From NCBI GenBank assembly GCA_950097015.1, contig CATNEN010000001.1, positions 3,038,001-3,102,000 of the forward strand: a DNA stretch of 64,000 nt, given 5' to 3'. This document shows, one piece after another, positions 39,985 through 64,000 of this stretch; within the stretch, counting starts at the first letter, position 1; each line of letters opens with the position of its first letter. This DNA is from Macrostomum hystrix (Eukaryota > Animalia > Platyhelminthes). Made by a program: the position numbers and the translations under genes. The notes under the pieces are model-generated. The model did not search any database, was not told where the DNA came from, and saw nothing but the letters and a program-made list of their open reading frames with translations.

Positions 39985-42900
39985 TCAACGATTTGACGTC
40001 GCCCCGGCAGATCGACGAGAACTGGCGGAGGCCGAGCCTCGGGCAGCGCCGGAGTCCACCTCAGATTCCACGGCCGGCGCTGGCGTCTCAGTCTCGGGCT
40101 CGCCAGGACCGGCCCAACGCTCCAGCTCCTGTCGCACGAGGCGTTCCATTCGTTCGCGTTTCTCGGCCTCGCTGGCGCCCTCGCATTCGGCCACCGAGTC
40201 GAGCAGCCGGCTCATGGTTTCGCGTCGCTTCAGCTTGGCCCTCTCCATGCTCTCCAGCTTCAGCAGCACCGCGTCGATGCGGTTCACAATGCCACCGATG
40301 CTGTGCTCCATGCGGTCTACGCGGCGCGACAGGTTCGTGAATTCGTCGACGCTGACACCGCCGGCGGTCTGAGGACGGCCGCGCGCGCTGCGAAGCGAGC
40401 CGCGCGTGCTGGCGCTCGCCCCACCGACCGCGCCGGCCTCTTTATCGTTGCTGTTGCTGTCCTCGTTTTCAATATCTTCAGCGGCTGCTTCGCTTCTGGC
40501 ACTGCCCGGACGCTGGCGTTGCTGCTCGGCGCGTTCGCTTTCGATTTGACTGTTCAGAGCGGCCTTGAGTGAGATAGGACATTGCTAGTGGTAAGACATT
40601 TGCAATGGTACGAGATTGGTTATTGGAGGACATTAGTAATCTAGGAAATCGGTAATGGTTGGACATCGGTAATGATGCGAGATTGGTAGTTTTAGGACAG
40701 TGTTACTGGTAGGACATTTGTAGTAATGGTAGTAAATCGGTACTTGTAGTAAATTAGTTATGGTAGGACATTGGTAGTGGTAGGACATTTGTAATGGTAG
40801 GACATGATTAATCGTAGGACATTGATATAGGTATTGGTTGGTCATTGGTGTTAATATTCGTTGGTAGAATAACCATAGTATCAGTAGAACATAGGTAATG
40901 GTACGATTGTGTAGTAGCTCTTACATGCAGATTAGCACATGTAATGGTGTTTTATTGCATATTTGTTAAGCGTCTTTTGGTTCAATAGTACCCGCGTTAG
41001 CTTGTAAAATCTGAATAAGTAAACATTTGTCCTACTAACCGCAATTAACTTACCTTCTGTCCTTCCAATTCCGACTGCATCCTGCGTTGTTCGTCTTCGT
41101 CCAGCACCCGATCGCCGTCCATATCGTAGCGAGCAAACAGGGCTTCGATTTCTCCGTCGGCGTAGCCTCGCCTTTATGTCGCGAGTTTGAATGTAAAGTA
41201 TTTGAGATTGTTTTAGGGCATCGGCAATAAGTTTTATTAATGTATTCTCCAGTGCATGTTAGTAACGGGTTAATAAGTTTATCAGGGACTCACATCTTGA
41301 GCTCAGTTCGCCATTCCTCAAAGTCCAACTGTCTGTCGTTGTTCATGTCCGCGGACTGCATGGCTCGCTGGATGTCCACAATCTTGTCGCGGCGCAGGTG
41401 CAGCTTGTCAAGCATTCGCCCGGCACGCTGAGAAATTATGTGAAGTGTGCGATAGAAGTGAAGTGTGGGAATAAAATATCTTTTGGTAATTGTATTGTAT
41501 TGTTTTGGGAGCGACTGTTGCTATGGCAACGCAACAACCGTTTTTAAGCGCATTAGGAATGATATTAATCAATTTTTAATTAGTGTAGGTGTCTCTTGTA
41601 GATGTAAATGATTCCGATTAATTTAGTGCATAATTTATTAACTTTGAGAACCCGATCGAGCCACGGCACCCGCGTTTTTGAGCACTGTCGAACTGAAAGC
41701 TTTCTGTGAAACCGTTTGTTACTTTCCCGCTCAGTTACTATTCCTATTTTTAGTGAGCCACTTTCGCACCTGCTTAAAGTAGTCGGTCATCTCAAAGTCG
41801 TTCGGCTGATTAGCCAGGTTGCTCTTCACCTCGCTGTAGGTGTCGTTGATGATGGCAAGGAACATGTTGATGAGCACGAAGAACACGAAGAACACGTACA
41901 GAATGAAGTAGATGGGTCCCAGCACTCGATGTGCATTCTGCAGGCTGGCGAAGTCGAAGTCGCCCAGAATGATTCGGAACAGTGTGAAGATGGCCTGCTG
42001 GAACTCGCGGAAGTCCTCCACCTTGGTGCCGAAGATGAGGTAGCCCAATTGGGCGAAGGCAAAGAACACGATGAAGAACATCACCGCGAATCCTAGGAGA
42101 TCTTTGGCGCAGGCGCCCAGAGTTGAGCTTAGCTGAGTCATAGTCTTATTGAAGCTGATGTACTTGAAGATTTTCACCCAGGCGAAGAACACGGTAATTG
42201 CGATCGCATTGTTGAACTGCTCCTGCCAGAAGGACAGGAAGTCAAAGTCTGGATAGCGAGTCTCGTCCTGCAGTAAGCTCGTCAGCTTGTTTCCTACGCT
42301 GATTGTCCGATAGACGTTGAAAGTGGCGCAGACTAGGGCGATGACAATCACCAAAATGTCCAGCCAGTTCCAGAAGGAGCTGAAGTAAGCCAGCTTGTGC
42401 CGCTTGATCTCAATGATCTCCTCAACAATGTAATAGCAGATGAAGAGCATGAAGATGCACTCGCAGGCTAGGACAAAATAGTCCACTGGTTCCACGTAGC
42501 GCAGCAGCTTGACTGTGCGGAACTCCCAGGAGGTGAAGCCGCCACCAGTAGCCGGAAACTCGGCTATCAGCTTGATCACGCAGAACAGATTAATGTTGGC
42601 ATTGTAGACCGTGAAGTCGATGAAGACCGCCCTGGTTGATCGGTCGATCCACAGTCCGTTAAAAAGTTCGCTGATTTTAGCGGACGTATCATCGCGACTT
42701 CGTCCGAGGTCGATGTAGTAGCCGCCGCCGTTGTAGGTGGCCAGCTTGCCGGTGTAGCCGCGACCGTCGAGCTGCTGCTCAGTTGAGTAGTTCCAGGCGG
42801 TCGAGTTCATGTAGCCGAACGGCTCGCGACTCTCGGCGCTGTGGCTGTACATGGCGTAGCAGGCGCGGATGTTGGCGCGGAAGTCAGCTGCGATGGAACA

Positions 42901-48075: not shown

Positions 48076-48757
48076 TCATACTTGTATTTGCCAGAATACT
48101 TCATTTCAAATTCCAAATTGTGAAATTCAGATTGGATTATATACCTGCCCTGCACAAAGAATAATTTCCGACAAATTTTCAGAGGCGATTCCTAGAAAAT
48201 CTGAGTCCATAAATAATACAATTGCAGACGCCTTGTTAGTACTCTAATAAGCAGATCTAAGTTCGAGCCATAATCATGCCTTACTTACCTGTCTCTAATA
48301 TATCTCTAAGTTAAGAAGCAGAAAATGATGTACACTGTCACAGATTTTGTACAGATAAAAAACACGTGTCAAGAATAATTTTAGCATCAGCTGGGGAGGC
48401 TATGACCCTATCAAGAGTACCGAAAACTTTCTGAAAGATAAGCAACCAAAGAGAAAGTTCTGACTGGCAACCATATGAGTGCGAGTCACTTTCGGTTAAA
48501 ACTAAAGTTTATCTCAGTTACATATTTTAGGGCGAGTCCAGGCAAAGCTCGGAGCACTGACTGCTTAGTGAGATCAGTTTCTTAGAAGCGATTTCCGGAG
48601 GCCTAAGAAGTCTGCGAGCTAAGCATTCTCAGCCAGGTGAGTGAGCTTTGATTTGTGTCAATAGAGCACTTGGGATACACGCTATCTTTTAAGGATACAA
48701 TTCCACGACCTATATTGGTTACAAACTGAAACCCTTTTGTCTCTGAAACCACTTTAC

Positions 48758-49840
48758 AGTCTGTGCTACCACCCTACTGTATCTGCTGCCACCCTACTGT
48801 CTCTGCTACCACCCTACTGTCTCTGCTACCACCCTACTGTCTGTGCTACCACCCTACTGTCTGTGCTACCACCCTACTGTCTCTGCTACCACCCTACTGT
48901 CTCTGCTACCACCCTACTGTCTCTGCTACCACCCTACTGTCTCTGCTACCACCCTACTGTCTCTGCTACCACCCTACTGTCTCTGCTACCACCCTACCGT
49001 CTCTGCTGTCTCTGCTACCACCCTACCGTATCTGCTACCACCCTACCGTCTCTGCTACCAACCTTCTGTTTCTGCTACCACCCTACTGTCTCTGCTACCA
49101 ACCTTCTGTTTCTGCTACCACCCTACTGTCTCTGCTACCACCCTACTGTCTGTGCTACCACCCTACTGTCTCTGCTACCACCCCACTGTCTGTGCTACCA
49201 CCCTACTGTCTCTGCTACCACCCTACTGTCTCTGCTACCACCCTACTGTCTGTGCTACCACCCTACTGTCTCTGCTACCACCCTACTGTCTGTGCTACCA
49301 CCCTACTGTCTCTGCTACCCCTCTACTGTCTCTGCTGCCACCCTACTGTCTCTGCTACCACCCTACTGTCTGTGCTACCACCCTACTGTCTGTGCTACCA
49401 CCCTACTGTCTCTGCTACCACCCTACTGTCTGTGCTACCACCCTACTGTCTGTGCTACCACCCTACTGTCTGTGCTACCACCCTACTGTCTGTGCTACCA
49501 CCCTATTGTCTCTGCTACCACCGTACTGTATCTGCTGCCACCCTACTGTCTGTGCTACCACCCTACTGTCTGTGCTACCACCCTACTGTCTGTGCTACCA
49601 CCCTACTGTCTGTGCTACCACCCTACTGTCTGTGCTACCACCCTACTGTCTCTGCTACCACCCTACTGTCTGTGCTACCACCCTACTGTCTCTGCTACCA
49701 CCCTACTGTCTCTGCTACCACCCTACTGTCTCTGCTACCACCCTACTGTCTCTGCTACCACCCTACTGTCTCTGCTGCCACCCTACTGTCTCTGCTACCA
49801 CCCTACTGTCTCTGCTGCCACCCTACTACTGTCTCTGCTA
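48758..49840. repeat. 20-bp minisatellite, ~54 copies; same family as 54955-55850
   Basis: Unit CTACTGTCT(C/G)TGCTACCACC. Confidence 0.97.
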
Positions 49841-50408
49841 CAAGGTCCTTAGATTCGATTTCTACATGGGTCTCACCTACTGTCTTTTTTATCTACTATA
49901 TGCAGTGTTGGGCATCGTTAATGAAAAACTTAACTTCGTTAACAGTTAAGAAGTTAACTCTAACTGGTGAATAAACTAACGATTAACGGTTAACGATTTA
50001 GCTTTTGGCAGAAAAGTAACGCAGAAATCGTTAAAAACGTAACTTTCACCCAAAAAACTTATTTCTTACATAACGACTGCTTACAAAATGTAAATAAACG
50101 CATTTTCTACCCTAAAACTGTCTTTTTGTTTCATTTTCATGATTATACTGTAATGAAATCGGTATTCTATTTTAAATAGTCTCGTATAAACTGTATTTTT
50201 CGCACCGATGTTTTGTATCAAGATGTAAGATAATTATTTGTTTAAAGGAGGCTTGTTTAGTTAAATATAAAGAAACATTAACTAATTAACTTAACTTAAC
50301 TAACTTAACTAAATTAACTAATGTTGCCAGTAGCTTTAGTCTAGACGCCCTGAACTACTGCTATGTAACGAATTGTCGGGATCAGCGCGTGCGCCGGCAA
50401 AGCGTCTT

Positions 50409-51357: not shown

Positions 51358-54300
51358 ATGCGTGTCATCTACCACACGAAGCTGCTGGCTAGCATGCTAT
51401 CTCGCAAAAAGACAGTCGACGAAGACAACCTCCAGGAAACGCAGCTGAATCGCTGCCTGAACACCATGGATCTCACTGCTCTGGGTGTCGGCTCAACCCT
51501 TGGCGCCGGTGTCTACGTTATTGCAGGCGAAGTGGCTCAGAAGACCACCGGGCCAGCCGTGGTCGCTTCGTTCTTCGTCGCTGCGGCCGCGTCAGTTCTA
51601 GCCGGCCTCTGCTACGCTGAATTCGGCGCCAGGGTGCCCAAGTCCGGCTCCGCCTATGTCTACAGCTACGTGTCTGTGGGAGAATTCATGGCTTTTGTCA
51701 TCGGCTGGAATCTCATCCTGGAGTATGTCATCGGCACCGCCAGTGTGGCCAGAGCATGGTCGCAAAACTTCGATAGCTTAGTCGGCGGTAAAATCATTGA
51801 CTTCTTCAAGGAGCACTTGAGCATGTCTCTGCCTGGTCTAGCCGAGTACCCGGACCTATTCGCTCTGGCTATGGTACTACTGCTCACGGTTATCATCGCG
51901 ATCGGTGTCAAAGAATCAGCCTGGGTTACAAACGTCTTTACGTTTATCAACCTGATTGTGCTGGCCACTGTGTTTGTCGCTGGCTGTTTTCTGTCCAGCT
52001 TCGACAACTGGAACATCCGGCCTGATGCCAATGGCACCGTCGTCTACCACAATGTCACTTACGGCCGGGACGAAGTCGGCGATGGCGGCTTCTTGCCCTT
52101 CGGCCTGCAGGGCGTTGTCTCTGGAGCTGGTACCTGCTTCTACGCGTTTGTTGGATTCGATGCGATAGCCACCACTGGAGAAGAGGTGAGAACGCTTGTG
52201 GATGAACAGGAAGTATGATACTATATTGTAACAACGAGTTTCCGAGCATTTCCTGCAAGGGTGTTTAACACCGATGCGTACTCACATTATCAATAATAAT
52301 AATTGCAGACACTAGACACGCAGCCAGCGAGGAGGCAATTCTGTCCGTTTCACTGACTCCTGAGTAAAACACGCTCACGGATACCGTACGCAGGCACGTG
52401 CTCACACACGTGTGTACATCTCCCTGACTTTCTCATCGTCAGGCAGTGTACACTTCACACTGGAGGTTGACTCCCAAGGCGCAAATTCCACGACAAGCCC
52501 CCAAGCCTTCTCTCCGCGGCTACGCCCCGAGTGGATGTGGCCTCGCCGCGGAATCGAGCTCAGTGACCTTGGTGCGAGAGGCCAATGGGTCAACCGCTCT
52601 GCCACTCAGGCCCACTCGCTTCCCTGAAGTTTAACAAACACTCGTAGCTTAAGAGTGACCCAGATGTCATCCTCTTCAACCCACAATCTCCCCCCTCGTG
52701 TCGCAGGTGAAAAACCCCCAGCGTGCAATCCCAATCAGCATCATTCTGAGTTTAGCGATCTGCTTTGGCGCCTACTGCGGAGTCAGCGCCGTGCTAACCC
52801 TGATGCAGCCGTACTTCGCGCTAGACCCGCTGGCGCCATTGCCGCAAGCATTCGCATCTCACGGCTGGCTTGTAGCCAATTACGTCATCGCTGTAGGAGC
52901 CATCTGTGCCCTGTCAACCAGCCTGTTAGGGGCCATGTTCCCGCTACCTCGAGTAGTCTACGCAATGGCTAGCGATGGACTAATCTTTCGCTTTCTGTCC
53001 CGTGTTAATGCTCGTCTGGCTACGCCACTGATTGCCACCCTGCTCACCGGAGTCATGGCTGGAGTCATGGCCTGCATGTTTGAGCTGAAGGAGCTGGTGG
53101 ATATGATGTCTATTGGCACCCTGCTGGCCTACACTCTGGTGGCTTTGTCTGTTCTCATCCTGCGTGGCACCTGCGACCTTGCAGCGTTTCGAAACGGTGC
53201 CGCAGCGAAGAACACAGCTGACAAGCAAGGAGAAATCTTGGACCAGCCTGGTGCAACATCGACCTCGATGAATGATGCCCTGGTTGATGCCGAGGAGGCT
53301 GACTATGTTGATAACGATGAAGAACAGGAACCACCAGAGGCTGTATCAATGAGAGCCTACCTGAGATTTTCTTTCAGTCGTGGTGGCGAAACAGATCCGA
53401 GTCCCCTGACGGAGTACATCACGCGCGTCAACTCGGGAGTGTTTCTGATCGCTTCAGGAGCGCTGGCTTTCATACTGGAACGACTGCCAGATCGACTTCA
53501 AGCCGGCCGACCCGAGGCGGTGATCCCGGCGGCAATCACCGGCCTGGTGTGCCTGGCGACCATGATCAGCCTGGCGCTGCAGCCGCAGAGTAGAAAACGG
53601 GTCGCTTTCAAGGTAAATTCTAATATGGCAAATACGTCGTACGAAGAACGCAGTAAAGAAAGACATATTCTTTTTTCAAAGAGAGTTTGTTTATTTTTAA
53701 GTAGCCTAAAAGTTGGTAGGTATCATTAAGGTAGATCAGTTTTTTTCGGTGAGGCCACATTGGTTTAGGGACTTGCGTCAGGAAGACGTTTAACAACGAT
53801 TTAACGAGTTGATTCTACGAGCGTAGCCTTGTGGTTAGAGCGTCGGCCTCACAACTTGAAGGTCAGGGGTTCGATTCCCGACTCCAGTGGAACTATTTGT
53901 TTCGTTTAGCAAGACGCTCAACTCCACATTGCTTCAGTTCACCCAGCTGTTAACTGGGTCCCAGCATTAACTGGGATAATTGAAGGTGGGTGTGGCGTCC
54001 CCCCAGTCCATGGACTGAACAGCCGTACGCAGCCTTCAGATGCGCCGCGCAATAGCTGCGGCTGTTCTGTCGGCTGCACGTCTGGCCCAAGTTGGGGCAG
54101 GTGTAATAAATTATTATATTTTCTTATAATTATTATTATCATGAAAGACGTAGAAACCAAAATAAATGAGTACTACTTAAAGTCAAATGGTAAAATGACA
54201 GCCGTGTTATTCTACTCATTAAACTTTTTTTCAACAGGTAGAAGAATTTGATGACTTGAATTCAGAGCCGTTAAGTGTCGTTTAAGGTAAATCAGATTTT

Positions 54301-54637
54301 CTCACAGAATTTCAATGTAAAAATCCAATCACCGCAGGTTCCTTGGGTGCCTTTCCTGCCGTGCCTGTCGATTCTGGCTAATTTGTACCTGATGACGGCA
54401 CTGTCTAGCAGCACCTGGCTACGTTTTGTTGTTTGGAGTGCCGTAGGTTTTATCATCTACTTTGGCTACGGTCTGTTGCACAGCACTGAGCACCAGCTGC
54501 AGACCCGGCCTCGAATTTTAGCAGCATCAGCAGCAGCAGCAGCAGATGGTGCAGCTGCAACCTATGGCATCAATGGAATGCAACACAGGCCAACAGTCAC
54601 TAGTCTCAATACAGATCACTCCACCTTTGTAGACTAG
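51358..54637 (+). CDS. Cationic amino acid transporter (SLC7A1-4/CAT family), ~677 aa
   Basis: Exons 51358-52185, 52707-53612, 54338-54637. Motifs: [89 protein letters not shown]. Probable 5'-UTR exon ending at 48636 (CAG|GTGAGT). Confidence 0.95.
52290..52610 (-). mobile_element. SINE family A copy
   Basis: Reverse complement of 36275-36635. Confidence 0.85.
53820..54115 (+). mobile_element. SINE family B copy
   Basis: Colinear with 2081-2385. Confidence 0.85.
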
Positions 54638-54954: not shown

Positions 54955-55850
54955 CTGCTAAGACTGTACTGTCTGTGCTGCCACCCTACTGTCTGTGCTG
55001 CCACCCTACTGTCTGTGCTACAACCCTACTGTCTGTGCTGCCACCCTACTGTCTGTGCTACAACCCTACTGTCTGTGCTGCCACCCTACTGTCTGTGCTG
55101 CCACCCTACTGTCTGTGCTGCCAACCTACTGTCTGTGCTGCCACCCTACTGTCTGTGCTGCCACCCTACTGTCTCTGCTACCACACTAGGGTGATGTCTG
55201 TGCTGCCACCCTACTGTCTGTGCTACAACCCTACTGTCTGTGCTGCCACCCTACTGTCTGTGCTGCCACCCTACTGTCTGTGCTGCCAACCTACTGTCTG
55301 TGCTGCCACCCTACTGTCTGTGCTGCCACCCTACTGTCTCTGCTACCACACTAGGGTGATGTCTGTGCTGCCACCCTACTGTCTGTGCTGCCACCCTACT
55401 GTCTGTGCTGCCAACCTACTGTCTGTGCTGCCACCCTACTGTCTCTGCTACCACACTAGGGTGATGTCTGTGCTGCCACCCTACTGTCTGTGCTGCCAGC
55501 CTACTGTCTGTGCTGCCACACTAGGGTGATGTCTGTGCTGCCACCCTACTGTCTGTGCTGCCAGCCTACTGTCTGTGCTGCCACACTAGGGTGATGTCTG
55601 TGCTGCCACCCTACTGTCTGTGCTGCCAGCCTACTGTCTGTGCTGCCACCCTACTGTCTGTGCTGCCACCCTACTGTCTGTGCTGCCACCCTACTGTCTG
55701 TAATGCCACCCTACTGTCTGTAATGCCACCCTACTGTCTGTAATGCCACCCTACTGTCTGTGCTGCCACCCTACTGTCTGTGCTGCCACCCTACTGTCTG
55801 TAATGCCACCCTACTGTCTCTGCTACCACACTAGGGTGATGTCTGTGCCA
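54955..55850. repeat. 20-bp minisatellite; same family as 48758-49840, with interspersed CACACTAGGGTGATG variant units
   Basis: Unit CTACTGTCTGTGCTGCCACC. Confidence 0.95.
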
Positions 55851-56830
55851 GCACACCTATTTATGTTACGACCCTTATAGTGAAATAAATTCTAAGGAAA
55901 ACAAGGCAATTTTTGTTATTTAAAAACATTTATTTTTCAAGATCTGTATTTTTGAGATTTGATATTAGTTGCATTTTTCTACGGAAATCTAACATGTTAT
56001 TGGATGTGTTATTTACTTTATAGTTAGTAACAGGAATAACACGGTTTTTTATTCTTGGTTGCAGTTCTGCAGGTATGTGATTATGGAAAAGTCGCATTTC
56101 GAGAAGGTTATATAGAAAATGGGATATTAGGCCCTTATTATTTTTCTATGAGTTCATGAGTATAATAATTAAGGATCATACAAGCACACAGCAACAAATA
56201 GTACAGCAACACGCAGTCCTTGAGTAGCATTTGAAAACAAAGCCGTTTAAAGCAAGTTTGGAATGATTTCATTAAGTTATTCATATCATAAATATTTTTA
56301 TTTAAATAATGAATGAATTATTTTATAATTAATAAATATAGTTGAAGTACAAAAAATATTGATTACATATTTTGTTTACAAACAACTATTCGTAATTATG
56401 TGTTTTAAAAAGAAACCAAGTGATTTGAAGGCCCAGATATTTCAAATTGTTTACCCGTCCCTTATTGCAAGTACTTTTCGAATGGTGGTCACAATTCTTC
56501 GGAAAACATTATTAAATGGGTTATAATTAAAGTTTAGTGCAGGTGGTGACGGTCTCCCCAGTCCATTGACTGAACAGCTGAACAGCCTTTGGAAGTTATA
56601 CTAGTGACCAAATTGTAAGGCTTTTGGTTCTAATTTATATTTATTATTGTATTATATATTTGTCTCAATGAGAGCATAATTTTTGGGTATGAAAATTCTA
56701 TACTAAACTGAGCTATTCACTTAGTTTATTACTCAATTATTGGAACTCTCCATGTAAAAAATAAATTATCTGAGTCAGCTAGAATTCCTCCCCATCAAAG
56801 CAGCTTGTACAGCAAATTAGTGAGATAATT

Positions 56831-59800
56831 TTAAAATTTTGGAAAAATTAGTGTCTTTGTTAGCGTCGAAGTGTAGCACGGTATCTGCCGGTCTGACGAA
56901 CTTAGTTTCACATCCGCTGTCACTCTAGGTAGCAGTTGAGTGAACTCCGGCGGACTATGGGCGCCGTCGTTATACGCTTTGAGAATTGAGTCTTTCAGAG
57001 CTTGAATAAATAATGTTCCTGTAGGCAGCCGCTCAGATTCGTCACCATCAGTGACGCTATAAACGTAGAGTGAGTCCTCATTTTTTTGCGCATTACAACT
57101 ACCTGGACAATAATTTATTTGTCTCGTCATCACGACTCGACATGCCTGAATAATGAATATTTTCGGTTTTCCTTGCAGCGTTGGACTTTTTCTGAGATTC
57201 TCGAAAAGCTTTTTTAAGCATACTTTATGTCCTTCATATGAAAATATGTAACCAGATTCTCCATGGGACATTATGCACAACAAAAAAGCGGTGCAAGTAT
57301 TCAATTCATTCTGTTCAAAAATGTGAAGATAGCTTTTGGAATCGAAGAATTGGCTTCGCAAATTCTTCAGGATCTTATATCTAAATCCTAGCTTTTCTAG
57401 ACAAAGAGGCAGGCATCCACGCTCAACATCACTTTGGGCTCCATCTCTTGAAGTTAATCCACTATCAAGCCCAAACTGTTCGATGTTTAATACAACTGCT
57501 AGTTTCAAGGCTTTCCTGCAATTTCCGAAGCAATCTGTTTGTCCTTTATTAGATCCAGCACCTAACAGGTGTTCAGCAACAAGAGTCGCACCATTTTTCG
57601 CTGCGTGTGTCAAAGCAGTGTAGCGCAGTTCATCCTGTTTAATATTTTTGAATGTAAGCGATTAAATGGAGTTAGAAGCTAGAAAAATGCTGTCTATTAA
57701 GGTAGATCAAGGACTTATAGACTACCATTTAGTGACCCGAAGCCAGCGAGGAGGCAATTCTGCCCATTCCGCTGACTCCTTGAGCACACACGCACACAGA
57801 TACCGTACGCATGCGCACGCTCACACATGTGACTTACTCATCGTCAGGCAGGGTACACTTTTATTGTGCGCCTTCATGGAGGTTGGCCGTCAAAGGCATA
57901 AATTGTACAAGCCTCCGAGATTTCTCTCAGCGGCTGCTCCACATGCGGCCTCGCATGTCAATCGAAGTTGCTGGGACTTTAGTGCGAGAGGCAAATGCGT
58001 CAACCGCTCCGCTACTTACCCCCCGTATAGTCTCGTTACAGATGAATTAATTAGAGATATCTCTTAAAAGATCACGAACTTTGAAAATCCGGACTTGTAA
58101 TTGTAATGATTTTTTAGTTCTGATAACTAATTGCTACTAATTTCGCATTGCTACCCATTCAACTAAAGATTTGAAATATTTTCGATTAAAAGGATACAGA
58201 TTTTTTATTATAGGTAAATACTCGGAGTTTTTCGAATTCCTTGAATTTTAATTTTGCTGTAGGAGCCATTTGCTTTCATTCAAAGCAAATTATTGAAATT
58301 TTTGCGTACTCACTATTAATCTGTGATCGGCGCCCATTTCAAGCAGAGCTATGACCACTTCGTCGTGTCCACTCTGTGCAGCTAGCATCAATGGTGTCTG
58401 CTTCAAGTTGTCCGGTCTGTTTACTTCAATTAACAAGTGCTCATGCGAAATAGCTTGCGTCGTCTGATAAACTTTCACGACTTGCAGGTGGCCTTGGAGA
58501 CTGGCCCAGCTGAGAGCTGATCGGCCTAGTACATCGCAGGCTGTAACCGACTGCGGATGCTTTTCTATTATGAACTGAACAAGGTCGCTTTTTTCCCTCT
58601 TCGCAGAGACTATCAGAAGGGTTTCGTTCATCGGCGAGACCCGCTGAAAAAATTCGCTTGCGCCTCGAACGTAGCTGATCAGTTCCTCATCGGTCCACTG
58701 ATCAGGAAATCTAAATAGCGTTTAGAACAGTTGAGGGCATTGAATTAGCTTTATTCATCGAATGAGCGCAATTAAAGTGCCTCGATTTCTTGAAGATTAC
58801 CTACCTTTCTTTCAACGACTCGGTGAGTTTTCGCTGCTCAATAAGCCCTTTTAGCTTTTCTTTTATGTTGTTTACTGATTCCCTGTCTTTTGCGTTATAT
58901 GCAAAGCGATTTTCTTTCAAAAGGGCTTCCATTTTTTCCAAGCAGATCTTTAACTGCTTTCGAGAGTTGCTGTAGTGACACACTGTCATTAGCTCTTCAA
59001 AGTCCGGGTCCTCTTGCAGTTGCTCAAACCAAGAGTCAATGTTCACAATCTGGAGTAATTCAGCTTGCAAGCTCCAGTAGAGGCAGCAAAAATTAATAAA
59101 CATCGGAGATTTGCCTTCTGCTGCTTGAGATTTCCGAACGACAAGCAGAGCCCTAACGAAATCTGGCAGGAACATCAATCCGTCCAATTGCGAATTCCAA
59201 GGAATGCAGAATCTCCAAGCCCAGTCGAAATTTATAGGACCAAATACTTTTTGGATATCGCTCGGCTCCCAGCTTCTGGTCACTCTGTGATCTGAGAGAC
59301 TTCTTATTAATTGTCTAGCGCTTAAAGGGTCATTGTACTTGATGTACACCAGCGCTTTCATGCAGATAATTGCTGTTCTGCACCAGTATTCGTTCTCGAG
59401 TTGTTTAAAGACTTCTAGTTCAGCATTCACGTTGCACTCGGAAGTCACCAGCTGCTCGAAGCAGGTCAATACGACTTTGTACAGCAGACCATACTTTTGG
59501 CCACTTGCTTCGTTACCTTCATGTCTCATGTCGTTTGGCAATACTTGCAGAGGGACCAGGATGTATGGGTGAAAGTAGAATCTTTTGTGAGGAAGATCCC
59601 GCAACTGTCTTTTAAGAGCTTTTGTTATAATTTCTGACAAGTTAGCTTTCAGCTGCGTAAGTTGGCTTCGGACTCTGCACTTCGTCTGCTGAAAGTCGCC
59701 TTCGATTCCTGCATTGCTGAAGTATAGCTGACAGTCTGGCAGGAAAAAGTTTGGCATACAAATTTCCGGAGTCCCGTCTTTGTCGAGAAACTCAATAATT

Positions 59801-62800
59801 TTGTTTATCGCTTCGTTTAGAAGAAACAAGAGATTTACAGGCTCCCATGGCACCACAACATTCATTTCATGTTCGCTCAGTAGGTAAAGAATTAAAGTTT
59901 TTGCGTGGTATGTTTTTAGGCCAGGTCGGTCAAATTTATACGACAAGATTCTTTTGAAAATGAACTTCAGTAGATAAAACAACTGGCCCTGACTGTCATT
60001 TAGATTTCTCAGCAACTGTTTCTCTAGAAAGCTGGTGCTGATTCTAGCTTCGTATTCCTTTGTAGGCCTTGTGGCTCTTACTAGGTGCAGAAGTGGTCTG
60101 TTTTCGACATCGAAATCCTGCATGTGGCGCTGTCCACGAATGAAGCTGCTGCAGCACTGATACGCATAACAGGTACTCTCGGCAGGCTTGGCACCGCAAG
60201 CGTGTTTTTGAATTGCCGCTTCGCTGCCTGAAAAAACAATGAATAACTAAAATGACCGTCAAATTGTTTCTTGGTTTGTGTTTAAAATTTAAGCTTTGTG
60301 CGTTATTTCCTGCGTTGTGCCAGCTTATCGCCCTCCTGTGTCTTGTCAGCCAAGTGTATTCGGGCTGGTTAAGGCTCGTTGCATCAAATAACTAGTTTTT
60401 TTGGTGTGCATCTATTCGATTTTCATTAAAAATATTAAGAGGCCATTAAAAAGAGTGTATACGCTCGTTTGATGGCAGTGAGGACCAGACCTAAGCATGT
60501 CTCGCCTCTGGCTTTGTTATACCATTTTTGTGCCCCGGGCCTGGAGCCGATTGGCCGGTCCACCGGTCTCTCCTTTCCTGTGTGCTTCCAGCCAGTCCTA
60601 CCCCTTGTCGCGTGCAGATTGGCTGGTGGGTTTGGTTCTCTTTGTCCCTCGTCTCTTGACGTGGCCTATTTAGTCTGTTTTAGTCCGTTTAGACCAGGGG
60701 TCGGCAAACTCCGGCCCGCGGGCCAGATGCGGCCCTCGAAGCTCCCAAATCCGGCCCGTTGCCCCTTCTGACATCTACAGTGTCCTGTTTCATCTCTCCC
60801 GTGTCTCATCTCTCCTGTGTCTCATCTCTCCCGTGTCTAATCTCTCCTGTGTCTCATCTCTCCCGTGTCTCATCTCTCCTGTGTCTCATCTCTCCTGTGT
60901 CTCATCTCTCCCGTGTCTAATCTCTCCTGTGTCTCATCTCTCCCGTGTCTAATCTCTCCTGTGTCTAATCTCTCCCGTGTCTCATCTCTCCCGTGTCTCA
61001 TCTCTCCCGTGTCTCATCTCTCCCGTGTCTCATCTCTCCCGTGTCTCATCGCTCTCGTGTCTAATCTCTCCCCTGTCTTATCTCTCCCGTGTCTCATCTC
61101 TCTCATGTATCATCTTTCTGTGTCTCATCTCTCCCGTGTCTAATCTCTCCTGTGTCTCATCTCTCCCGTGTCTAATCTCTCCTGTGTCTAATCTCTCCCG
61201 TGTCTCATCTCTCCCGTGTCTCATCTCTCCCGTGTCTCATCGCTCTCGTGTCTAATCTCTCCCCTGTCTTATCTCTCCCGTGTCTCATCTCTCTCATGTA
61301 TCATCTTTCTGTGTCTCATCTCTCCCGTGTCTAATCTCTCCCGTGTCTAATCTCTCCCCTGTCTTATCTCTCCCGTGTCTCATCTCTCCCCTATCTCATA
61401 TTTATACAGTCAATGCGGCCCGTTGTCGTGTTTTAGGTTTTCTCTTTGGCCCGCCAGCAAATAAGTTTGCCTACCCCTGGTTTAGACACTACCACATAGG
61501 GGCGCCACTACCACATGGGGACGCCACTACCACATGGGAAGCGCCACTACCACATGGGAAGCGCCACTACCACATGGGAAGCGCCACTACCACATGGGAA
61601 GCGCCACTACCACATGGGAAGCGCCACTACCACATGGGAAGCGCCACTACCACATGGGAAGCGGCACTACCACATGGGAAGCGCCACTACCACATGGGAA
61701 GCGCCACTACCACATGGGAAGCGCCACTACCACATGGGAAGCGCCACTACCACATGGGGCCACTACTCGTCATATGCAGGGTGCCACATAGTTTCTTCAG
61801 CCGATTAGGGGGGCGTGGCCCTACGACCCACTATGCCTTAGACATGTAAGAATCTGTTTATCGAATTGTGCAAGACAATTAAGCAGGCTATTAGAGCAAC
61901 TAACTCACTCGAACCCTTGAAGTAAGCAAATGAGACGACCAGCTTTTGATACGACGGGTAAGAAAACACAAAGTAAATAAAATTAAACTTACCAATTAAG
62001 GCCCGTACAATAGCGTAGCCTTTCTCTACTAATGCTTTTTCGGTGCTTAGTTTACATTCGCAGGCTTCGCTTAGGTGTATAGGCTCTTCAGCCCTGACTA
62101 TTAGTGTCCAGTTGATGTCTGAATCGCTTGAAATCGAACCGTTTACCTGCGTCAAGTTGTCAGCCCAACCTTCAGCATAGCTGCCAGTTATGTGAATATC
62201 TTCGTTGGTGATTTGCCTTACAATGTACTGCAAGAAATCTGCCATTGTCTGTTGAAGCATTGCTCTTTGTGCCGTGAAGCCAGCTGCGTTCAGCATGGCA
62301 TGAATAGTCAAACTAAGAAGCCTGTCGTCCGTAGTTTCCCGCCTGCTGTAGTAATACAATAACGAATGTATAAATTAGTCACTGGGAGCTTGCAGCCCAT
62401 TGTTTAAAGCTTCGGACTTCTGACCAAGAGTTTGGGAGTTTGCATCGCAGCCAAAAGGAATCAATTGTGCCTTTGGGCAAGAAACTTGATTCCCCGTGTG
62501 CCTCAGCTCACCCAGCGTCAACATAGGCACCAGTATCAGCTAAGGGGAAGAGATTGTGAGTGCGGCGGCCTCCACAGTCCATGGATTGACTCTTTAGAGT
62601 TAATTCTACATAGCCTAGTACAGAGGTTGTAGCCTAGTGGTTAGGGCGTCGAACTCACGACTTGAAGGTCGGAGGTTCGATTCCCGACTTCACTGAAACT
62701 ATTTGTTTTCTTTTAGCAAGAAGCTTAACTCCGCATTGCTTCAGTTCACCCAGCTGTTAAATGGGTACCAGCATCAGCTGGGATAGTTGAAGGTGGGTGT

Positions 62801-64000
62801 GGCGGGGGGGGTTTCACAAACTCGAAATTTCACAACGTCGAAAGAACCTTTCTTCATAAGCTCGAAACTTCATAAGCTCGAAACTTCATAAGCTCGAAAC
62901 TTCACGACGTCGAAAACTAAAATAGCAGCTACCTTCATAGCAGCCATGAAATCTCTTGCTAAAGCTTTCGACGTTGCGAAGTTTCGAGCTTATGAAAAAA
63001 GGCTTTTCTGTGTTGTGAAATTTCGAGCTTGTGATAGCACCCCGGTGTGGCGTCCCCCCAGTCCATGGACTGAACAGCAATACGCAGCCTTCAGTCGCAG
63101 TCGCGCAATAGCTGTGGCTGTGCTGTCGGCTGCACATCTGACCCTATTGGGGCAGGTGTAATCAATTATTATTATTGGTATTACTATTATTATTATTACA
63201 TAAAAATTAGCATATGAGAGCCGTATAGCCGTACACAGCCTTTGAAAGCATCTCGTAATGGCTGTAAATTTGGCCCAATTAGGCTAGAAACGATTTCTAT
63301 TATTCCCTTTTATAGTCGGTGGTGAAGAAATGAACCTGCCTAAGATTATTGCTAAGTTATTAAATTCATAGCATACTTACCCAGGTAGACTGTAGAGGTT
63401 TGGGATACATCTTTCGACATAGGATTCGCTGCATGAAATAGAACGCATGAGCAAAATGCTTCAGTTTGAACATTTGTATCATTGACTATTATTAAAATTA
63501 GTTCGTCTTTCAACTATGGAGTAGAGAAATTTACCTGTCAAGAAGTCGCACAATTTGGTAGCGTCCAAATTTCTCTGCAAGCTGGAAACATGTGGCTCCT
63601 TCTTTGTCCTTTTTCTGGGCATCTGCTCCATTATGAAGCAACACTTTCGCTGCCCTGACATGGCCCGCAATGCAGGCCCTTGCGAGCGGTGTCCTGCCTT
63701 CATCATCAGTCGCGTCGATAAAAGAAGCTCGATCTTTCAGTAGGATCTCGATGAAGCTGTGCTGACCTGCATCAGCAGCCAGCATGAGTATGCTACCAGT
63801 TTCGTCAGGTTGATCGACGGATTCTATTTTCTGAACTAAAATCCGAGCCAATTCGACATCACCGTTCAAAATGGATCGCTTGAGGAGCTGCAGAGCGTCT
63901 GCGGGCTCTTCAATGCTAGAGACTGTCTTGAGTATCAATTCGTTGTTAGCTTCTCCAATTGAACTAAGTTGAATTAGACTGTTTGTGGCAAGACTATGGT
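56831..64000 (-). CDS. Ankyrin - cGAS-like/Mab21 nucleotidyltransferase (cGLR) - ankyrin - caspase (peptidase C14) fusion protein, >1160 aa, 5' end outside the window
   Basis: Exons >64000-63535, 63428-63381, 62345-61993, 60227-58805, 58710-58314, 57634-56831; junction phases 2/2/1/2/0 are all consistent. ANK: GRTPLARACIAGH, GRSALSWASLQGH, QTPLMLAAQSGH. NTase: TGSYAEG..SDSDIN, ISTSFLEKQLL, GLKTYHAKTL, MPNFF. Caspase: CIMSHG, GKPKIFIIQACR, GTLFIQAL, QIPCYTSTLTK. Confidence 0.85.
57725..58020 (-). mobile_element. SINE family A copy (diverged)
   Basis: Reverse complement of 36275-36635. Confidence 0.75.
60695..61479. mobile_element. hAT-Charlie/Buster-like MITE with an expanded internal minisatellite
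   Basis: Same TIRs as 50736-51250; 8-bp TSD GTTTAGAC at 60687-60694 and 61480-61487. Confidence 0.9.
61488..61765. repeat. 20-bp tandem repeat, ~13 copies
   Basis: Unit GCGCCACTACCACATGGGAA. Confidence 0.95.
62621..63190 (+). mobile_element. SINE family B copy interrupted by a MITE; an older diverged SINE-B copy lies at ~62385-62590
   Basis: 5' half 62621-62804 and 3' half 63044-63190 are colinear with 2081-2385. Confidence 0.85.
62805..63043. mobile_element. Mutator (MULE)-like MITE, 239 bp
   Basis: 9-bp TSD GGTGTGGCG at 62796-62804 and 63044-63052; long imperfect TIRs (GGGG..TCACAA.CTCGAAATTTCACAAC...TTCATAAGCTCGAAACTT). Confidence 0.8.

What the first reader, a model, noticed from the sequence alone, without database searches (positions are those of the whole stretch)
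56831..64000. One-protein immune module: ankyrin - cGAS-like receptor (Mab21 NTase) - ankyrin - caspase fusion
Seen: the ORF track shows five separate minus-strand ORFs. With GT-AG sites and a 48-bp exon at 63428-63381 that the track misses, they splice into one uninterrupted >1160-aa frame, with phases 2,2,1,2,0 all matching. Established: animal cGLRs signal through diffusible cyclic dinucleotides to STING, and initiator caspases are normally recruited by CARD/DED/death domains. In bacterial CBASS and type III CRISPR systems, nucleotide signals can switch on separately encoded caspase-like proteases. Inference: here a cGAS-fold domain replaces the death-fold prodomain, so ligand-induced oligomerisation or nucleotide binding could activate the protease in cis, bypassing STING. 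I do not know of a characterised protein with this architecture, but could not search.
Basis: partly seen in the sequence, partly recalled or inferred. Interest (0 to 1): 0.93.

Follow-up and report, generated by a model that had tools for sequence, protein, structure and literature searches.

The report
Flatworm cGAS-like pseudo-enzyme fused to caspase
This is a real, expressed flatworm gene that joins ankyrin repeats, a cGAS-like domain with a broken catalytic site and an intact caspase in one protein, a conserved but undescribed design that may link sensing directly to cell death.

Summary
Six minus-strand exons (five GT-AG introns, phases 2,2,1,2,0) give one frame. It runs past the window edge, about 1332 aa from the first ATG. 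Spliced contigs from three runs, with no mismatches, join exon 4 to exon 5 to exon 6. This removes the stop at 58801. Homology to Macrostomum lignano proteins confirms the exon 3/4 joint. The joints around the 48-bp exon are not shown by reads.

The middle domain belongs to the cGAS/Mab21 fold family. An AlphaFold model of a paralogue matches human cGAS at Z 19. The family has at least 146 copies in this 220-Mb genome. Li et al. 2023 had already put M. lignano members in their cGLR screen.

The caspase keeps His, Cys and the Asp-binding pocket. The NTase site does not: this gene has D-N-S where 67 of 67 sampled unfused paralogues keep D-x-D. All caspase-fused copies (four loci here, four M. 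lignano proteins) have lost catalytic carboxylates.

I read it as a single-chain sensor-executioner with a pseudo-NTase scaffold. That mechanism is inferred. I found no paper describing this fusion. The scan noted the tandem copies and the pseudo-enzyme idea before (s1-846602, s1-846618, s1-846637).

The parts
63535..64000 (-). Exon 1, the part inside the window. It holds the C-terminal part of a long first coding exon: a low-complexity N-terminal region followed by 3-4 ankyrin repeats. The ORF continues upstream to G000:C1:3102604. The first ATG is at window-equivalent 64508.
   Evidence: ORF and Ank_2 E=4e-24. Extended ORF L013:531-1604(-) with Ank_2 E=4e-30. Donor ACAG|GTAAAT.
63381..63428 (-). 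Exon 2, a 48-nt symmetric micro-exon (linker peptide ESYVERCIPNLYSLP). It is predicted only.
   Evidence: Acceptor tttcatgcag| and donor |gtaagt. A 54-nt micro-exon with the same phases lies at the same place in tandem paralogue B. No read evidence. Skipping it keeps the frame.
61993..62345 (-). Exon 3, the N-terminal half of the cGAS/Mab21-type NTase core (spine helix, G-S loop, first catalytic strand).
   Evidence: 53% identity to P0001 residues 1-104. At least 146 paralogous hits in the own genome. No Pfam hit.
62180..62185 (-). G-S of the NTase activation loop (GSYAEGW). It is retained.
   Evidence: G65/S66 of P0134 are invariant or near-invariant in A2.
62111..62119 (-). Degenerate catalytic dyad D-I-N (gac atc aac). 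The family consensus is D-I-D, so the second carboxylate is replaced by Asn.
   Evidence: The columns are D87/D89 of P0134, at the start of strand E87-93.
58805..60227 (-). Exon 4. It holds the rest of the NTase core, the Mab-21_C (HhH/H2TH-like) lobe, an all-helical extension of about 270 aa, and a terminal helical hairpin.
   Evidence: Translation has no stop. Mab-21_C 18.8 bits, below the cut-off. phmmer gave 129 hits, best P0001 at E=7e-138. RNA contigs cover 58805-60228.
60175..60177 (-). Ser (agt) at the position of the third catalytic Asp (family RPAQD-TC; here KPAES-TC).
   Evidence: D148 of P0134 is near-invariant in A2. Its profile column aligns with the Asp of cGAS 'SVDITLAL'.
58314..58710 (-). 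Exon 5, a linker plus ankyrin repeats.
   Evidence: Ank_2 E=3e-14. The joints 58805|58710 and 58314|57634 are seen in contigs of three runs.
56831..57634 (-). Exon 6: the last ankyrin repeat, the caspase p20/p10 domain, and the stop at 56831-56833.
   Evidence: Peptidase_C14 E=2e-28, 100 bits. Caspase-3 E=3e-16. RNA contigs reach 56732-56786.
57260..57268 (-). Caspase catalytic His motif S-H-G.
57140..57148 (-). Caspase catalytic Cys motif Q-A-C(-R-V).

Best explanation
SHOWN. This is one expressed gene of a macrostomid flatworm. The protein is about 1332 aa. In order it has: a disordered N-terminus, ankyrin repeats, a cGAS/Mab21-fold domain, a helical extension with no clear match to a solved fold, more ankyrin repeats, and a caspase. 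It belongs to a lineage-specific cGLR-like family of about 150 copies. Within the family it sits in a small clade, shared with Macrostomum lignano, whose members all end in a caspase. The caspase keeps every catalytic and Asp-pocket residue and has a short inter-subunit linker. The NTase site keeps G-S but has lost two of its three carboxylates. The domain as a whole is as conserved between species as the caspase is.

INFERRED. The cGAS-like domain no longer makes a nucleotide signal. It serves as a ligand-binding or self-associating scaffold, together with the ankyrin and helical modules. When its trigger is met (foreign nucleic acid is the likeliest, by analogy with cGAS/cGLRs), several chains are brought together. 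The C-terminal caspase domains then dimerise and switch on by induced proximity, as initiator caspases do on an apoptosome or inflammasome. Detection is thus wired to proteolysis and cell death within one polypeptide, without STING or an adaptor.

My odds: real fused gene, above 0.95. Non-catalytic NTase domain, about 0.8. Induced-proximity sensor-executioner, about 0.45. Immune role, about 0.5.
For: - Single mRNA: spliced, mismatch-free contigs in X4, X5 and X6 span 60228 to 56768 across both introns.
- Only one 100% copy of exon 4 exists in the genome, so the joined form is not a retrocopy.
- Fold: the AF2 model of paralogue P0134 (pLDDT 84.7) matches human cGAS at Z 19.1, rmsd 3.6 A over 266 residues, spanning cGAS 162-521. 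Foldseek gives E=2e-7 with probability 1.0.
- Family link: several members pass the Mab-21_C cut-off. A profile that includes the family hits cGLR1 at E=4e-31 and cGAS at 1e-22.
- Active site: 0 of 4 caspase-linked loci here and 0 of 3 M. lignano caspase fusions whose motifs were read (P0001, P0130, P0010) keep the triad. P0225, a >=90%-identical member of P0001's cluster, was not read separately. By contrast, 67 of 67 sampled unfused paralogues keep G-S and D-x-D, and 9 of 9 keep the third Asp.
- Clade: (P0001, P0130, (window, (tandem A, tandem B))) has SH-aLRT 99. A second clade, locus C1:9.2 Mb with P0010, also has 99.
- Conservation: the window is 53% identical to P0001 in exon 3, 49% in exon 4 and 52% in the caspase.
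- Caspase: the equivalents of R64, H121, Q161, C163 and R207 are all present.
- No CARD, DED or death domain appears in any exon.
Against: - No ligand, oligomer or protease activity has been tested.
- The fold model is of a paralogue that is 35-52% identical, not of this protein. The joined chain was not folded.
- A D-to-N change can leave weak metal binding, and a Glu sits next to the lost third Asp. Residual catalysis is therefore not excluded.
- Some M. lignano members with dead sites (P0013, P0014) carry no recognised effector, so loss of the site is not tied to fusion alone.
- The homodimer test of the helical extension gave no verdict.
- The immune role is by analogy only. Expression is modest (contig depth 7-9), and its regulation is unknown.
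Confidence: 0.5

Rival explanations
1. Nucleotide-gated caspase. The pseudo-NTase pocket still binds a nucleotide, and G-S is retained. It would act as the receptor for a second messenger made by the many catalytically intact paralogues. Binding would switch on the fused caspase. This would be an animal counterpart of bacterial nucleotide-activated proteases.
For: - G-S loop and overall fold are kept.
- About 150 paralogues with intact triads exist in the same genome.
- Inactive Mab21 proteins can bind nucleotides: PDB 5eom, MAB21L1 with CTP, is among the fold hits.
- Only one weak STING-like candidate is present in the genome.
Against: - No binding data exist.
- The NTase donor/acceptor pocket is not a known cyclic-nucleotide receptor site.
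- None of the M. lignano family members cloned by Li et al. 2023 is reported as active in the held text. It is therefore not shown that the paralogues make any signal.
Confidence: 0.15
2. Ankyrin-recruited initiator caspase. The ankyrin repeats dock the protein onto an upstream partner or platform, as proposed for the 'ANK caspases' of parasitic flatworms. The cGAS-like domain would be a structural relic or spacer. The role could be developmental, germline or regenerative apoptosis rather than immunity.
For: - ANK repeats lie directly before the caspase.
- ANK caspases, and a kinase-prodomain caspase in M. lignano, are described in PMC11463336.
- The NTase site is dead.
Against: - The cGLR-like domain and its extension are conserved at about 50% between species, no less than the caspase. 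They are also kept in two separate caspase clades. That is not expected of a spacer.
- The family's size and tandem turnover look like immune-type diversification.
Confidence: 0.2
3. Still an active cGLR. The domain makes a nucleotide signal despite the substitutions, and the caspase is an added second output.
For: G-S is kept, one dyad Asp is kept, and a Glu lies adjacent to the lost third Asp.
Against: - Two of the three carboxylates are replaced here, and they are replaced in different ways in the sister copies (N-I-D + S; D-I-N + T). The unfused paralogues are invariant.
- From established knowledge of cGAS (not tested here), mutation of the equivalent acidic residues abolishes activity.
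Confidence: 0.07
4. Gene-model artefact: two neighbouring genes (ANK-Mab21-like, ending at the stop at 58801, and ANK-caspase) wrongly joined.
For: An in-frame stop follows exon 4 if the 94-nt intron is retained.
Against: - Three runs carry contigs with the 94-nt and 679-nt introns precisely removed.
- No listed contig retains intron 4.
- The same domain order is found in four loci here and four M. lignano proteins.
Confidence: 0.02

Closest known systems
cGAS-like receptors (cGLRs) / Mab21 NTase superfamily (Li et al. 2023, PMC9980059)
   Same: Same bilobal cGAS fold with Mab-21_C lobe, G-S loop and SFS-x-EK motif. M. lignano members of this very family were among the proteins cloned for that paper's cGLR screen. 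ANK, TPR and death-domain fusions of cGLRs are reported there.
   Different: That paper describes 87% of cGLRs as stand-alone enzymes. It mentions no caspase fusion in the held text or tables. [quoted passage not shown] Here the catalytic triad is degenerate and a protease is fused in cis. Neither product synthesis nor STING signalling is shown.
Platyhelminth 'ANK caspases' and caspases with unusual prodomains (PMC11463336, Genome Biol Evol 2024)
   Same: A caspase preceded by ankyrin repeats instead of CARD or DED, in a flatworm. That paper also reports an M. lignano caspase with a kinase-like prodomain.
   Different: That paper places ANK caspases in parasitic flatworms only and mentions no Mab21/cGAS-like domain. 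Here the 'prodomain' is about 1000 aa and contains a cGAS-fold domain, in a free-living macrostomid lineage. Orthology to the parasites' ANK caspases was not tested.
Catalytically inactive or orphan Mab21 proteins (MAB21L1, MB21D2)
   Same: cGAS fold with an incomplete or unproven active site. MAB21L1 was crystallised with bound CTP (PDB 5eom, a hit). MB21D2 and MAB21L1 are hit by the mixed family profile.
   Different: Those are stand-alone proteins without ANK or caspase. The canonical Mab-21 gene of this genome is elsewhere (C24:4853213-4853761, 128.7 bits).
Apoptosome and inflammasome initiator caspases (induced-proximity activation); from established knowledge, not tested here
   Same: Proposed logic: sensor oligomerisation brings caspase domains together. 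The short linker and long N-terminal region are initiator-like.
   Different: Those systems use separate sensor, adaptor and caspase chains joined by death-fold domains. Here there is no death-fold domain and everything is on one chain.
Bacterial CBASS and type III CRISPR nucleotide-activated proteases; from established knowledge, not tested here
   Same: They couple a CD-NTase-type or cyclase signalling module to a caspase-like protease output.
   Different: The bacterial parts are separate proteins linked by a diffusible nucleotide, and the protease is activated through SAVED or CARF sensors. Here the link is covalent and the NTase is probably dead.

Membership tests
cGLR / cGAS-like receptor (Mab21 NTase superfamily) | Bilobal cGAS/Mab21 fold (NTase core plus helical Mab-21_C lobe) | tested here: met
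   Tested on a paralogue, not on the window's own joined chain. The AF2 model of P0134 matches human cGAS at Z 19.1 over 266 residues (cGAS 162-521) and Cv-cGLR1 at Z 18.1. Window exon 4 matches family members at E down to 7e-138.
cGLR / cGAS-like receptor (Mab21 NTase superfamily) | Pfam Mab-21 (PF03281) and Mab-21_C (PF20266) above the gathering score | tested here: not met
   Exon 3 has no Mab-21 hit. Exon 4 scores 18.8 bits for Mab-21_C against 24.1. Paralogues P0005, P0012, P0032, P0133 and P0134 do pass Mab-21_C.
cGLR / cGAS-like receptor (Mab21 NTase superfamily) | Catalytic G-S loop and the [DE]h[DE]...[DE] carboxylate triad | tested here: not met
   G-S is present. The triad reads D, N, S (62111-62119; 60175-60177) where the family has D, D, D.
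cGLR / cGAS-like receptor (Mab21 NTase superfamily) | Ligand-activated synthesis of a nucleotide second messenger that signals through STING | not testable with these tools
   This needs biochemistry. The genome holds only one sub-threshold STING_LBD candidate (25 bits against 27).
Caspase (peptidase family C14A) | Peptidase_C14 domain above the threshold | tested here: met
   PF00656 E=2e-28, 100 bits against 21.4. Caspase-3 chains at E=3e-16.
Caspase (peptidase family C14A) | Catalytic His (SHG) and Cys (QACxG), and the Asp-specific S1 pocket (Arg, Gln, Arg) | tested here: met
   The alignment to caspase-3 shows TSRDG, SHG, QACRV and SER at the R64, H121, Q161/C163 and R207 positions.
Initiator caspase of the classical kind | Death-fold prodomain (CARD or DED) | tested here: not met
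   No CARD, DED or death-domain Pfam hit in any exon. The helical extension has no clear match to any solved fold, death folds included.
Platyhelminth ANK caspase | Ankyrin repeats N-terminal to the caspase domain | tested here: met
   ANK in exon 5 and at the start of exon 6.
Platyhelminth ANK caspase | Caspase domain falls in the monophyletic ANK-caspase clade of PMC11463336 | not tested
A word-based search for long proteins with this caspase type found only M. lignano P0001 and P0130.

The most novel reading that the evidence does not exclude
The dead cGAS-like domain is a receptor, not a relic. It would bind a nucleotide messenger made by the roughly 150 catalytically intact paralogues, or foreign nucleic acid directly, and gate the fused caspase. 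Macrostomid flatworms would then run a STING-independent cGLR-to-caspase death pathway on a single chain. This would be the first animal counterpart of bacterial nucleotide-activated protease effectors. It might also be the ancestor of the ANK caspases of parasitic flatworms.
Probability: 0.12. Interest if true: 0.9.

Novelty: new variant of a known kind. Interest (0 to 1): 0.72.

Why it matters
cGLRs are thought to act almost always as stand-alone enzymes that signal through diffusible nucleotides to STING. Caspases are thought to be recruited through death-fold domains. Here both rules are broken in one conserved protein: a cGAS-fold domain that has given up catalysis is wired covalently to an intact caspase.

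The fusion is kept in two clades and two species, so it is used. If the mechanism holds, it shows how a second-messenger pathway can collapse into a direct sensor-effector fusion. It would also give a simple system for asking what cGAS-fold domains sense.

The finding also corrects the picture for flatworms. At least one free-living lineage has a very large cGLR-like family. It also has ANK-type caspases whose long 'prodomain' hides a domain that Pfam misses. RNAi is established in Macrostomum (own knowledge), so the idea is testable.

Tried and rejected
- Pfam on the exons alone: no Mab-21 hit for exon 3, and a sub-threshold Mab-21_C hit for exon 4.
- phmmer of exon 4 against PDB sequences: nothing useful.
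- Profile of alignment A1 against PDB: swamped by ankyrin repeats. I repeated it with the ANK-free set A2.
- The search for homologous proteins on P0001 residues 600-1099: swamped by ankyrin proteins. With the caspase part alone it found only P0001 and P0130, so I could not reach the parasites' ANK caspases.
- Helical extension (window 58807-59430; AF2 pLDDT 87.4): no Foldseek match at E<=0.001. The best VIA Z was 8.7, on designed or TPR-like helical proteins, which is background for helical models. The ESM Atlas gave only generic TPR-like bacterial clusters at low recognition. No death fold was seen.
- Complex prediction, two copies of that extension: no verdict (score 0.00, the partner's fold uncertain). 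This is no evidence either way.
- ARAGORN found no tRNA in 56000-64000, but Rfam did find one.
- Two-gene model: rejected by the spliced contigs.
- Retrocopy as the source of the spliced contigs: rejected, because the genome has a single 100% match to exon 4.
- 'Dead site implies fused effector' as a strict rule: rejected. P0013 and P0014 have degenerate sites and no recognised effector.
- Papers: no hit for Macrostomum + Mab21. No cGLR-caspase fusion was found.
- Exons were searched one by one by reference, and full-length M. lignano homologues served as proxies.


Full report
**1. The gene model**

I read the minus strand directly and translated each piece by reference. The exons are:
- exon 1: ends at 63535
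- exon 2: 63428-63381
- exon 3: 62345-61993
- exon 4: 60227-58805
- exon 5: 58710-58314
- exon 6: 57634-56831

All five introns begin with GT and end with AG, with good consensus. They are 106, 1035, 1765, 94 and 679 nt long. The phases are 2,2,1,2,0.

The first exon is cut by the window edge. In the genome (G000:C1, window = 3038001-3102000) its ORF runs on to C1:3102604. The first ATG is at window-equivalent 64508. From that ATG the model is 3996 nt, or 1332 aa.

Every search used single exons by reference, or full-length natural homologues.

**2. Expression and splicing**

The look-up of sequencing runs gave four runs of one study (organism C) that hold 76-81% of the words of 56831-60227. 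That is about the exon share of the stretch.

I laid X4, X5 and X6 on 56700-60300. Each has a contig with no mismatches whose pieces are 60228-58805, 58710-58313 and 57633 downwards. The joints skip 94 and 679 nt with CT..AC ends on the + strand, which is GT..AG on the gene's strand. The stop at 58801-58803 is therefore removed, and the Mab21-like, ANK and caspase parts lie on one mature mRNA.

The genome has only one 100% match to exon 4, so the joined form is not a retrocopy. X5's 3139-nt contig continues 451 nt upstream of 60228.

The exon 3 / exon 4 joint is confirmed by colinear homology with M. lignano P0001. The exon 1-2-3 joints are unverified. A symmetric 54-nt micro-exon with the same phases sits at the same place in a tandem paralogue. 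Skipping the 48-nt exon would not break the frame.

**3. The domains**

Pfam gives ankyrin repeats in exons 1, 5 and the start of 6. It gives Peptidase_C14 in exon 6 (E=2e-28). For exon 4 it gives only a sub-threshold Mab-21_C hit (18.8 bits against 24.1), and nothing for exon 3.

phmmer of exon 4 against 1.84 billion representatives found 129 relatives. Those whose source was looked up are from Macrostomum lignano, apart from one metagenome protein and the distant Mab-21/TPR proteins, one of which is from a bivalve. Several relatives pass the Mab-21_C cut-off. The weakest hits are bona fide Mab-21 + Mab-21_C + TPR proteins; the one looked up, P0078, is from the bivalve Sinanodonta woodiana.

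I made an AlphaFold model of the ANK-free paralogue P0134. It is 35-52% identical to the window's exons 3/4 and has pLDDT 84.7 and pTM 0.85. Its best PDB matches are cGAS chains, followed by MAB21L1: Foldseek E=2e-7 with probability 1.0. VIA-align gives Z 19.1, rmsd 3.6 A over 266 residues, with model 22-335 on human cGAS 162-521. Oyster Cv-cGLR1 scores Z 18.1.

A profile that mixes the family with the Mab-21/TPR proteins hits cGLR1 (8gjy) at E=4e-31 and cGAS at 1e-22. So the family is a divergent branch of the cGAS/Mab21 superfamily.

This is not a new assignment. M. lignano members such as PAA86972.1 are listed among the proteins cloned for the cGLR screen of Li et al. 2023 (PMC9980059, supplement 3). 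The main text does not mention them.

**4. The active sites**

In the mixed alignment A2, S66 and D87 of P0134 are invariant. G65, D89 and D148 are nearly invariant. In the model, D87-I-D89 opens strand 87-93. The D148 column aligns with the Asp of cGAS 'SVDITLAL'. The family's triad is therefore D87, D89 and D148, with G65-S66.

The triad reads as follows in each copy:

| Copy | Dyad | Third position |
|---|---|---|
| Family consensus | D-I-D | D (RPAQD-TC) |
| This gene | D-I-N (62111-62119) | S (60175-60177), with a Glu one residue before |
| Two tandem paralogues | N-I-D | S |
| Locus at C1:9.2 Mb | D-I-N | not read |
| M. lignano P0001 | D-M-N | S |
| M. lignano P0130 | D-I-N | S |
| M. 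lignano P0010 | D-I-N | T |

 This gene keeps G-S (62180-62185). P0225, a >=90%-identical member of P0001's cluster, has the same domain order, but its motifs were not read separately.

In contrast, all 67 other paralogues sampled from this genome keep G-S and D-x-D (27, 40). Nine of nine keep the third Asp. An M. lignano member fused to a protein kinase (P0133) is also degenerate (D-I-G, S). A RING-fused member (P0006) is intact. Two members with dead sites, P0013 and P0014, show no known effector. Loss of the site is therefore universal among caspase fusions but not exclusive to them.

The caspase aligns with caspase-3 over the whole p20/p10. It keeps the equivalents of R64, H121, Q161, C163 and R207. 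Its inter-subunit linker is shorter than in caspase-3.

**5. Family, paralogues and age of the fusion**

The genome is 220 Mb in 42 contigs. It has at least 90 scored matches to exon 4 and at least 146 to exon 3. These are lower bounds.

A caspase lies just downstream of a family member at only four loci:
- this gene
- a tandem copy at C1:3105641-3110998
- a second tandem copy at C1:3119614-3125201, nearly identical to the first
- a divergent copy at C1:9212902-9222971

All four have the same order: ANK, NTase, extension, ANK, caspase.

In a quick maximum-likelihood tree of the exon-4 region, this gene, the tandem copies and M. lignano P0001/P0130 form a clade with SH-aLRT 99. The 9.2-Mb locus groups with M. 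lignano P0010 (2111 aa, same architecture), also at 99. The branches between the two clades are weak. I left the careful tree search unfinished. Rows L002 and L003 duplicate the tandem loci.

The fusion therefore predates the split of the two species. It arose once or twice.

Between this gene and P0001, the cGAS-like exons are 49-53% identical and the caspase is 52% identical. The dead NTase domain is under as much constraint as the protease.

The closest public proteins are all about 50% identical and from M. lignano. The window therefore probably comes from another macrostomid. This is inference.

**6. The rest of the protein**

The N-terminal 220 aa or so are low-complexity and have no Pfam hit.

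About 270 aa of exon 4 lie after the cGAS-like lobe. They are conserved across the family. I modelled the last 208 residues from the window's own sequence (pLDDT 87.4). They form helices, a small sheet and a terminal helical hairpin. I found no convincing match to any solved fold: Foldseek gave nothing at E<=0.001, and the best VIA Z was 8.7 on helical-repeat proteins, which is background. The Atlas found nothing meaningful. No death fold was seen.

A homodimer prediction for this piece returned no verdict.

**7. Mechanism**

Shown:
- one mRNA
- an intact caspase
- a conserved cGAS-fold domain without a complete catalytic triad
- no death-fold domain
- conservation of the whole arrangement

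Inferred: the cGAS-like domain, with its ANK and helical partners, acts as a non-catalytic sensor or assembly module. Bringing chains together activates the caspase by induced proximity. I give this about 0.45.

Rivals:
- The pocket is a nucleotide receptor fed by the intact paralogues (0.15).
- The ANK repeats do the recruiting and the cGAS-like part is structural, perhaps in non-immune apoptosis (0.2).
- The domain is still an enzyme (0.07).
- The model is an artefact (0.02).

The genome has one sub-threshold STING_LBD-like ORF. A STING route for the intact paralogues is therefore neither shown nor excluded.

**8. What is known, and novelty**

Li et al. 2023 report that 87% of cGLRs are stand-alone and that some carry ANK, TPR or death domains. 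[quoted passage not shown] No caspase fusion appears in the held text or tables.

A 2024 survey of lophotrochozoan caspases (PMC11463336) describes ANK caspases as specific to parasitic flatworms. It notes one M. lignano caspase with a kinase-like prodomain and does not mention a Mab21 domain. Other searches found nothing on such a fusion.

The M. lignano proteins are public but named 'hypothetical protein' or 'Caspase family p20 domain-containing protein'.

I class the finding as a new variant of known kinds: a cGLR-family domain with a fused effector, and a caspase with an unusual prodomain.

Earlier notes of this scan had flagged three things: the tandem cluster (s1-846602), the SDIN/SNID difference (s1-846618) and the pseudo-enzyme idea (s1-846637). 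I tested the last two here and they hold.

Noticed in passing
window 57734-57830 (intron 5): A short dispersed repeat. Dozens of contigs in all four runs, including another organism's run X1, match only about 57734-57780, at summed depth 2,000-3,700. They run on into other, partly similar sequence on both sides. A similar element lies in an intron of tandem paralogue B (L048).
   Followed up: partly
window 62623-62692 (+), inside intron 2: Rfam tRNA match (40.4 bits against 29) antisense to the gene. ARAGORN did not call it. Similar flanking sequence is repeated at about 62500-62560 and 62740-62800, which suggests tRNA-derived SINE copies.
   Followed up: partly
window 60786-61399 and 61487-61758 (intron 3): Two tandem arrays: a 16-nt unit with 38.5 copies and a 20-nt unit with 13.7 copies.
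   Followed up: no
G000:C2:9104529-9104996 (L045:997-2010, minus strand): The only STING_LBD-like ORF found in the genome. It scores 25 bits, just under Pfam's cut-off of 27, and covers profile positions 3-145 of 182 in a 337-aa open frame.
   Followed up: partly
M. lignano P0133 (1185 aa) and P0006 (2381 aa): Other effector fusions exist in the same family. P0133 is ANK, cGLR-like, protein kinase, with a degenerate NTase site (D-I-G, S). P0006 is WSC, ANK, cGLR-like, RING, with an intact site.
   Followed up: partly
window 62020-62100 and 60150-60200; family-wide: A conserved His/Cys cluster in the NTase core (H-x4-C-x-C ... C ... T-C-x4-C-C), kept in nearly all family members. It may be a structural zinc site, at a different place from the cGAS zinc thumb.
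   Followed up: no
window 48737-49974, 54975-55529; L013:2206-3751: Long satellite arrays that read LLPPYCLCYHPTV... in one frame. They flank the genes of the cluster, including the 3.7-kb spacer between this gene and the next tandem copy.
   Followed up: no
window 51358-54637 (+) and 41731-42852 (-): The neighbouring genes look unrelated to this gene. By eye, one is a cationic amino-acid transporter-like gene and the other a PKD2-like channel exon.
   Followed up: no
G000:C24:4853213-4853761: The single canonical Mab-21 (PF03281) match of the genome, at 128.7 bits. It is separate from the roughly 150-member divergent family, which PF03281 does not detect.
   Followed up: no
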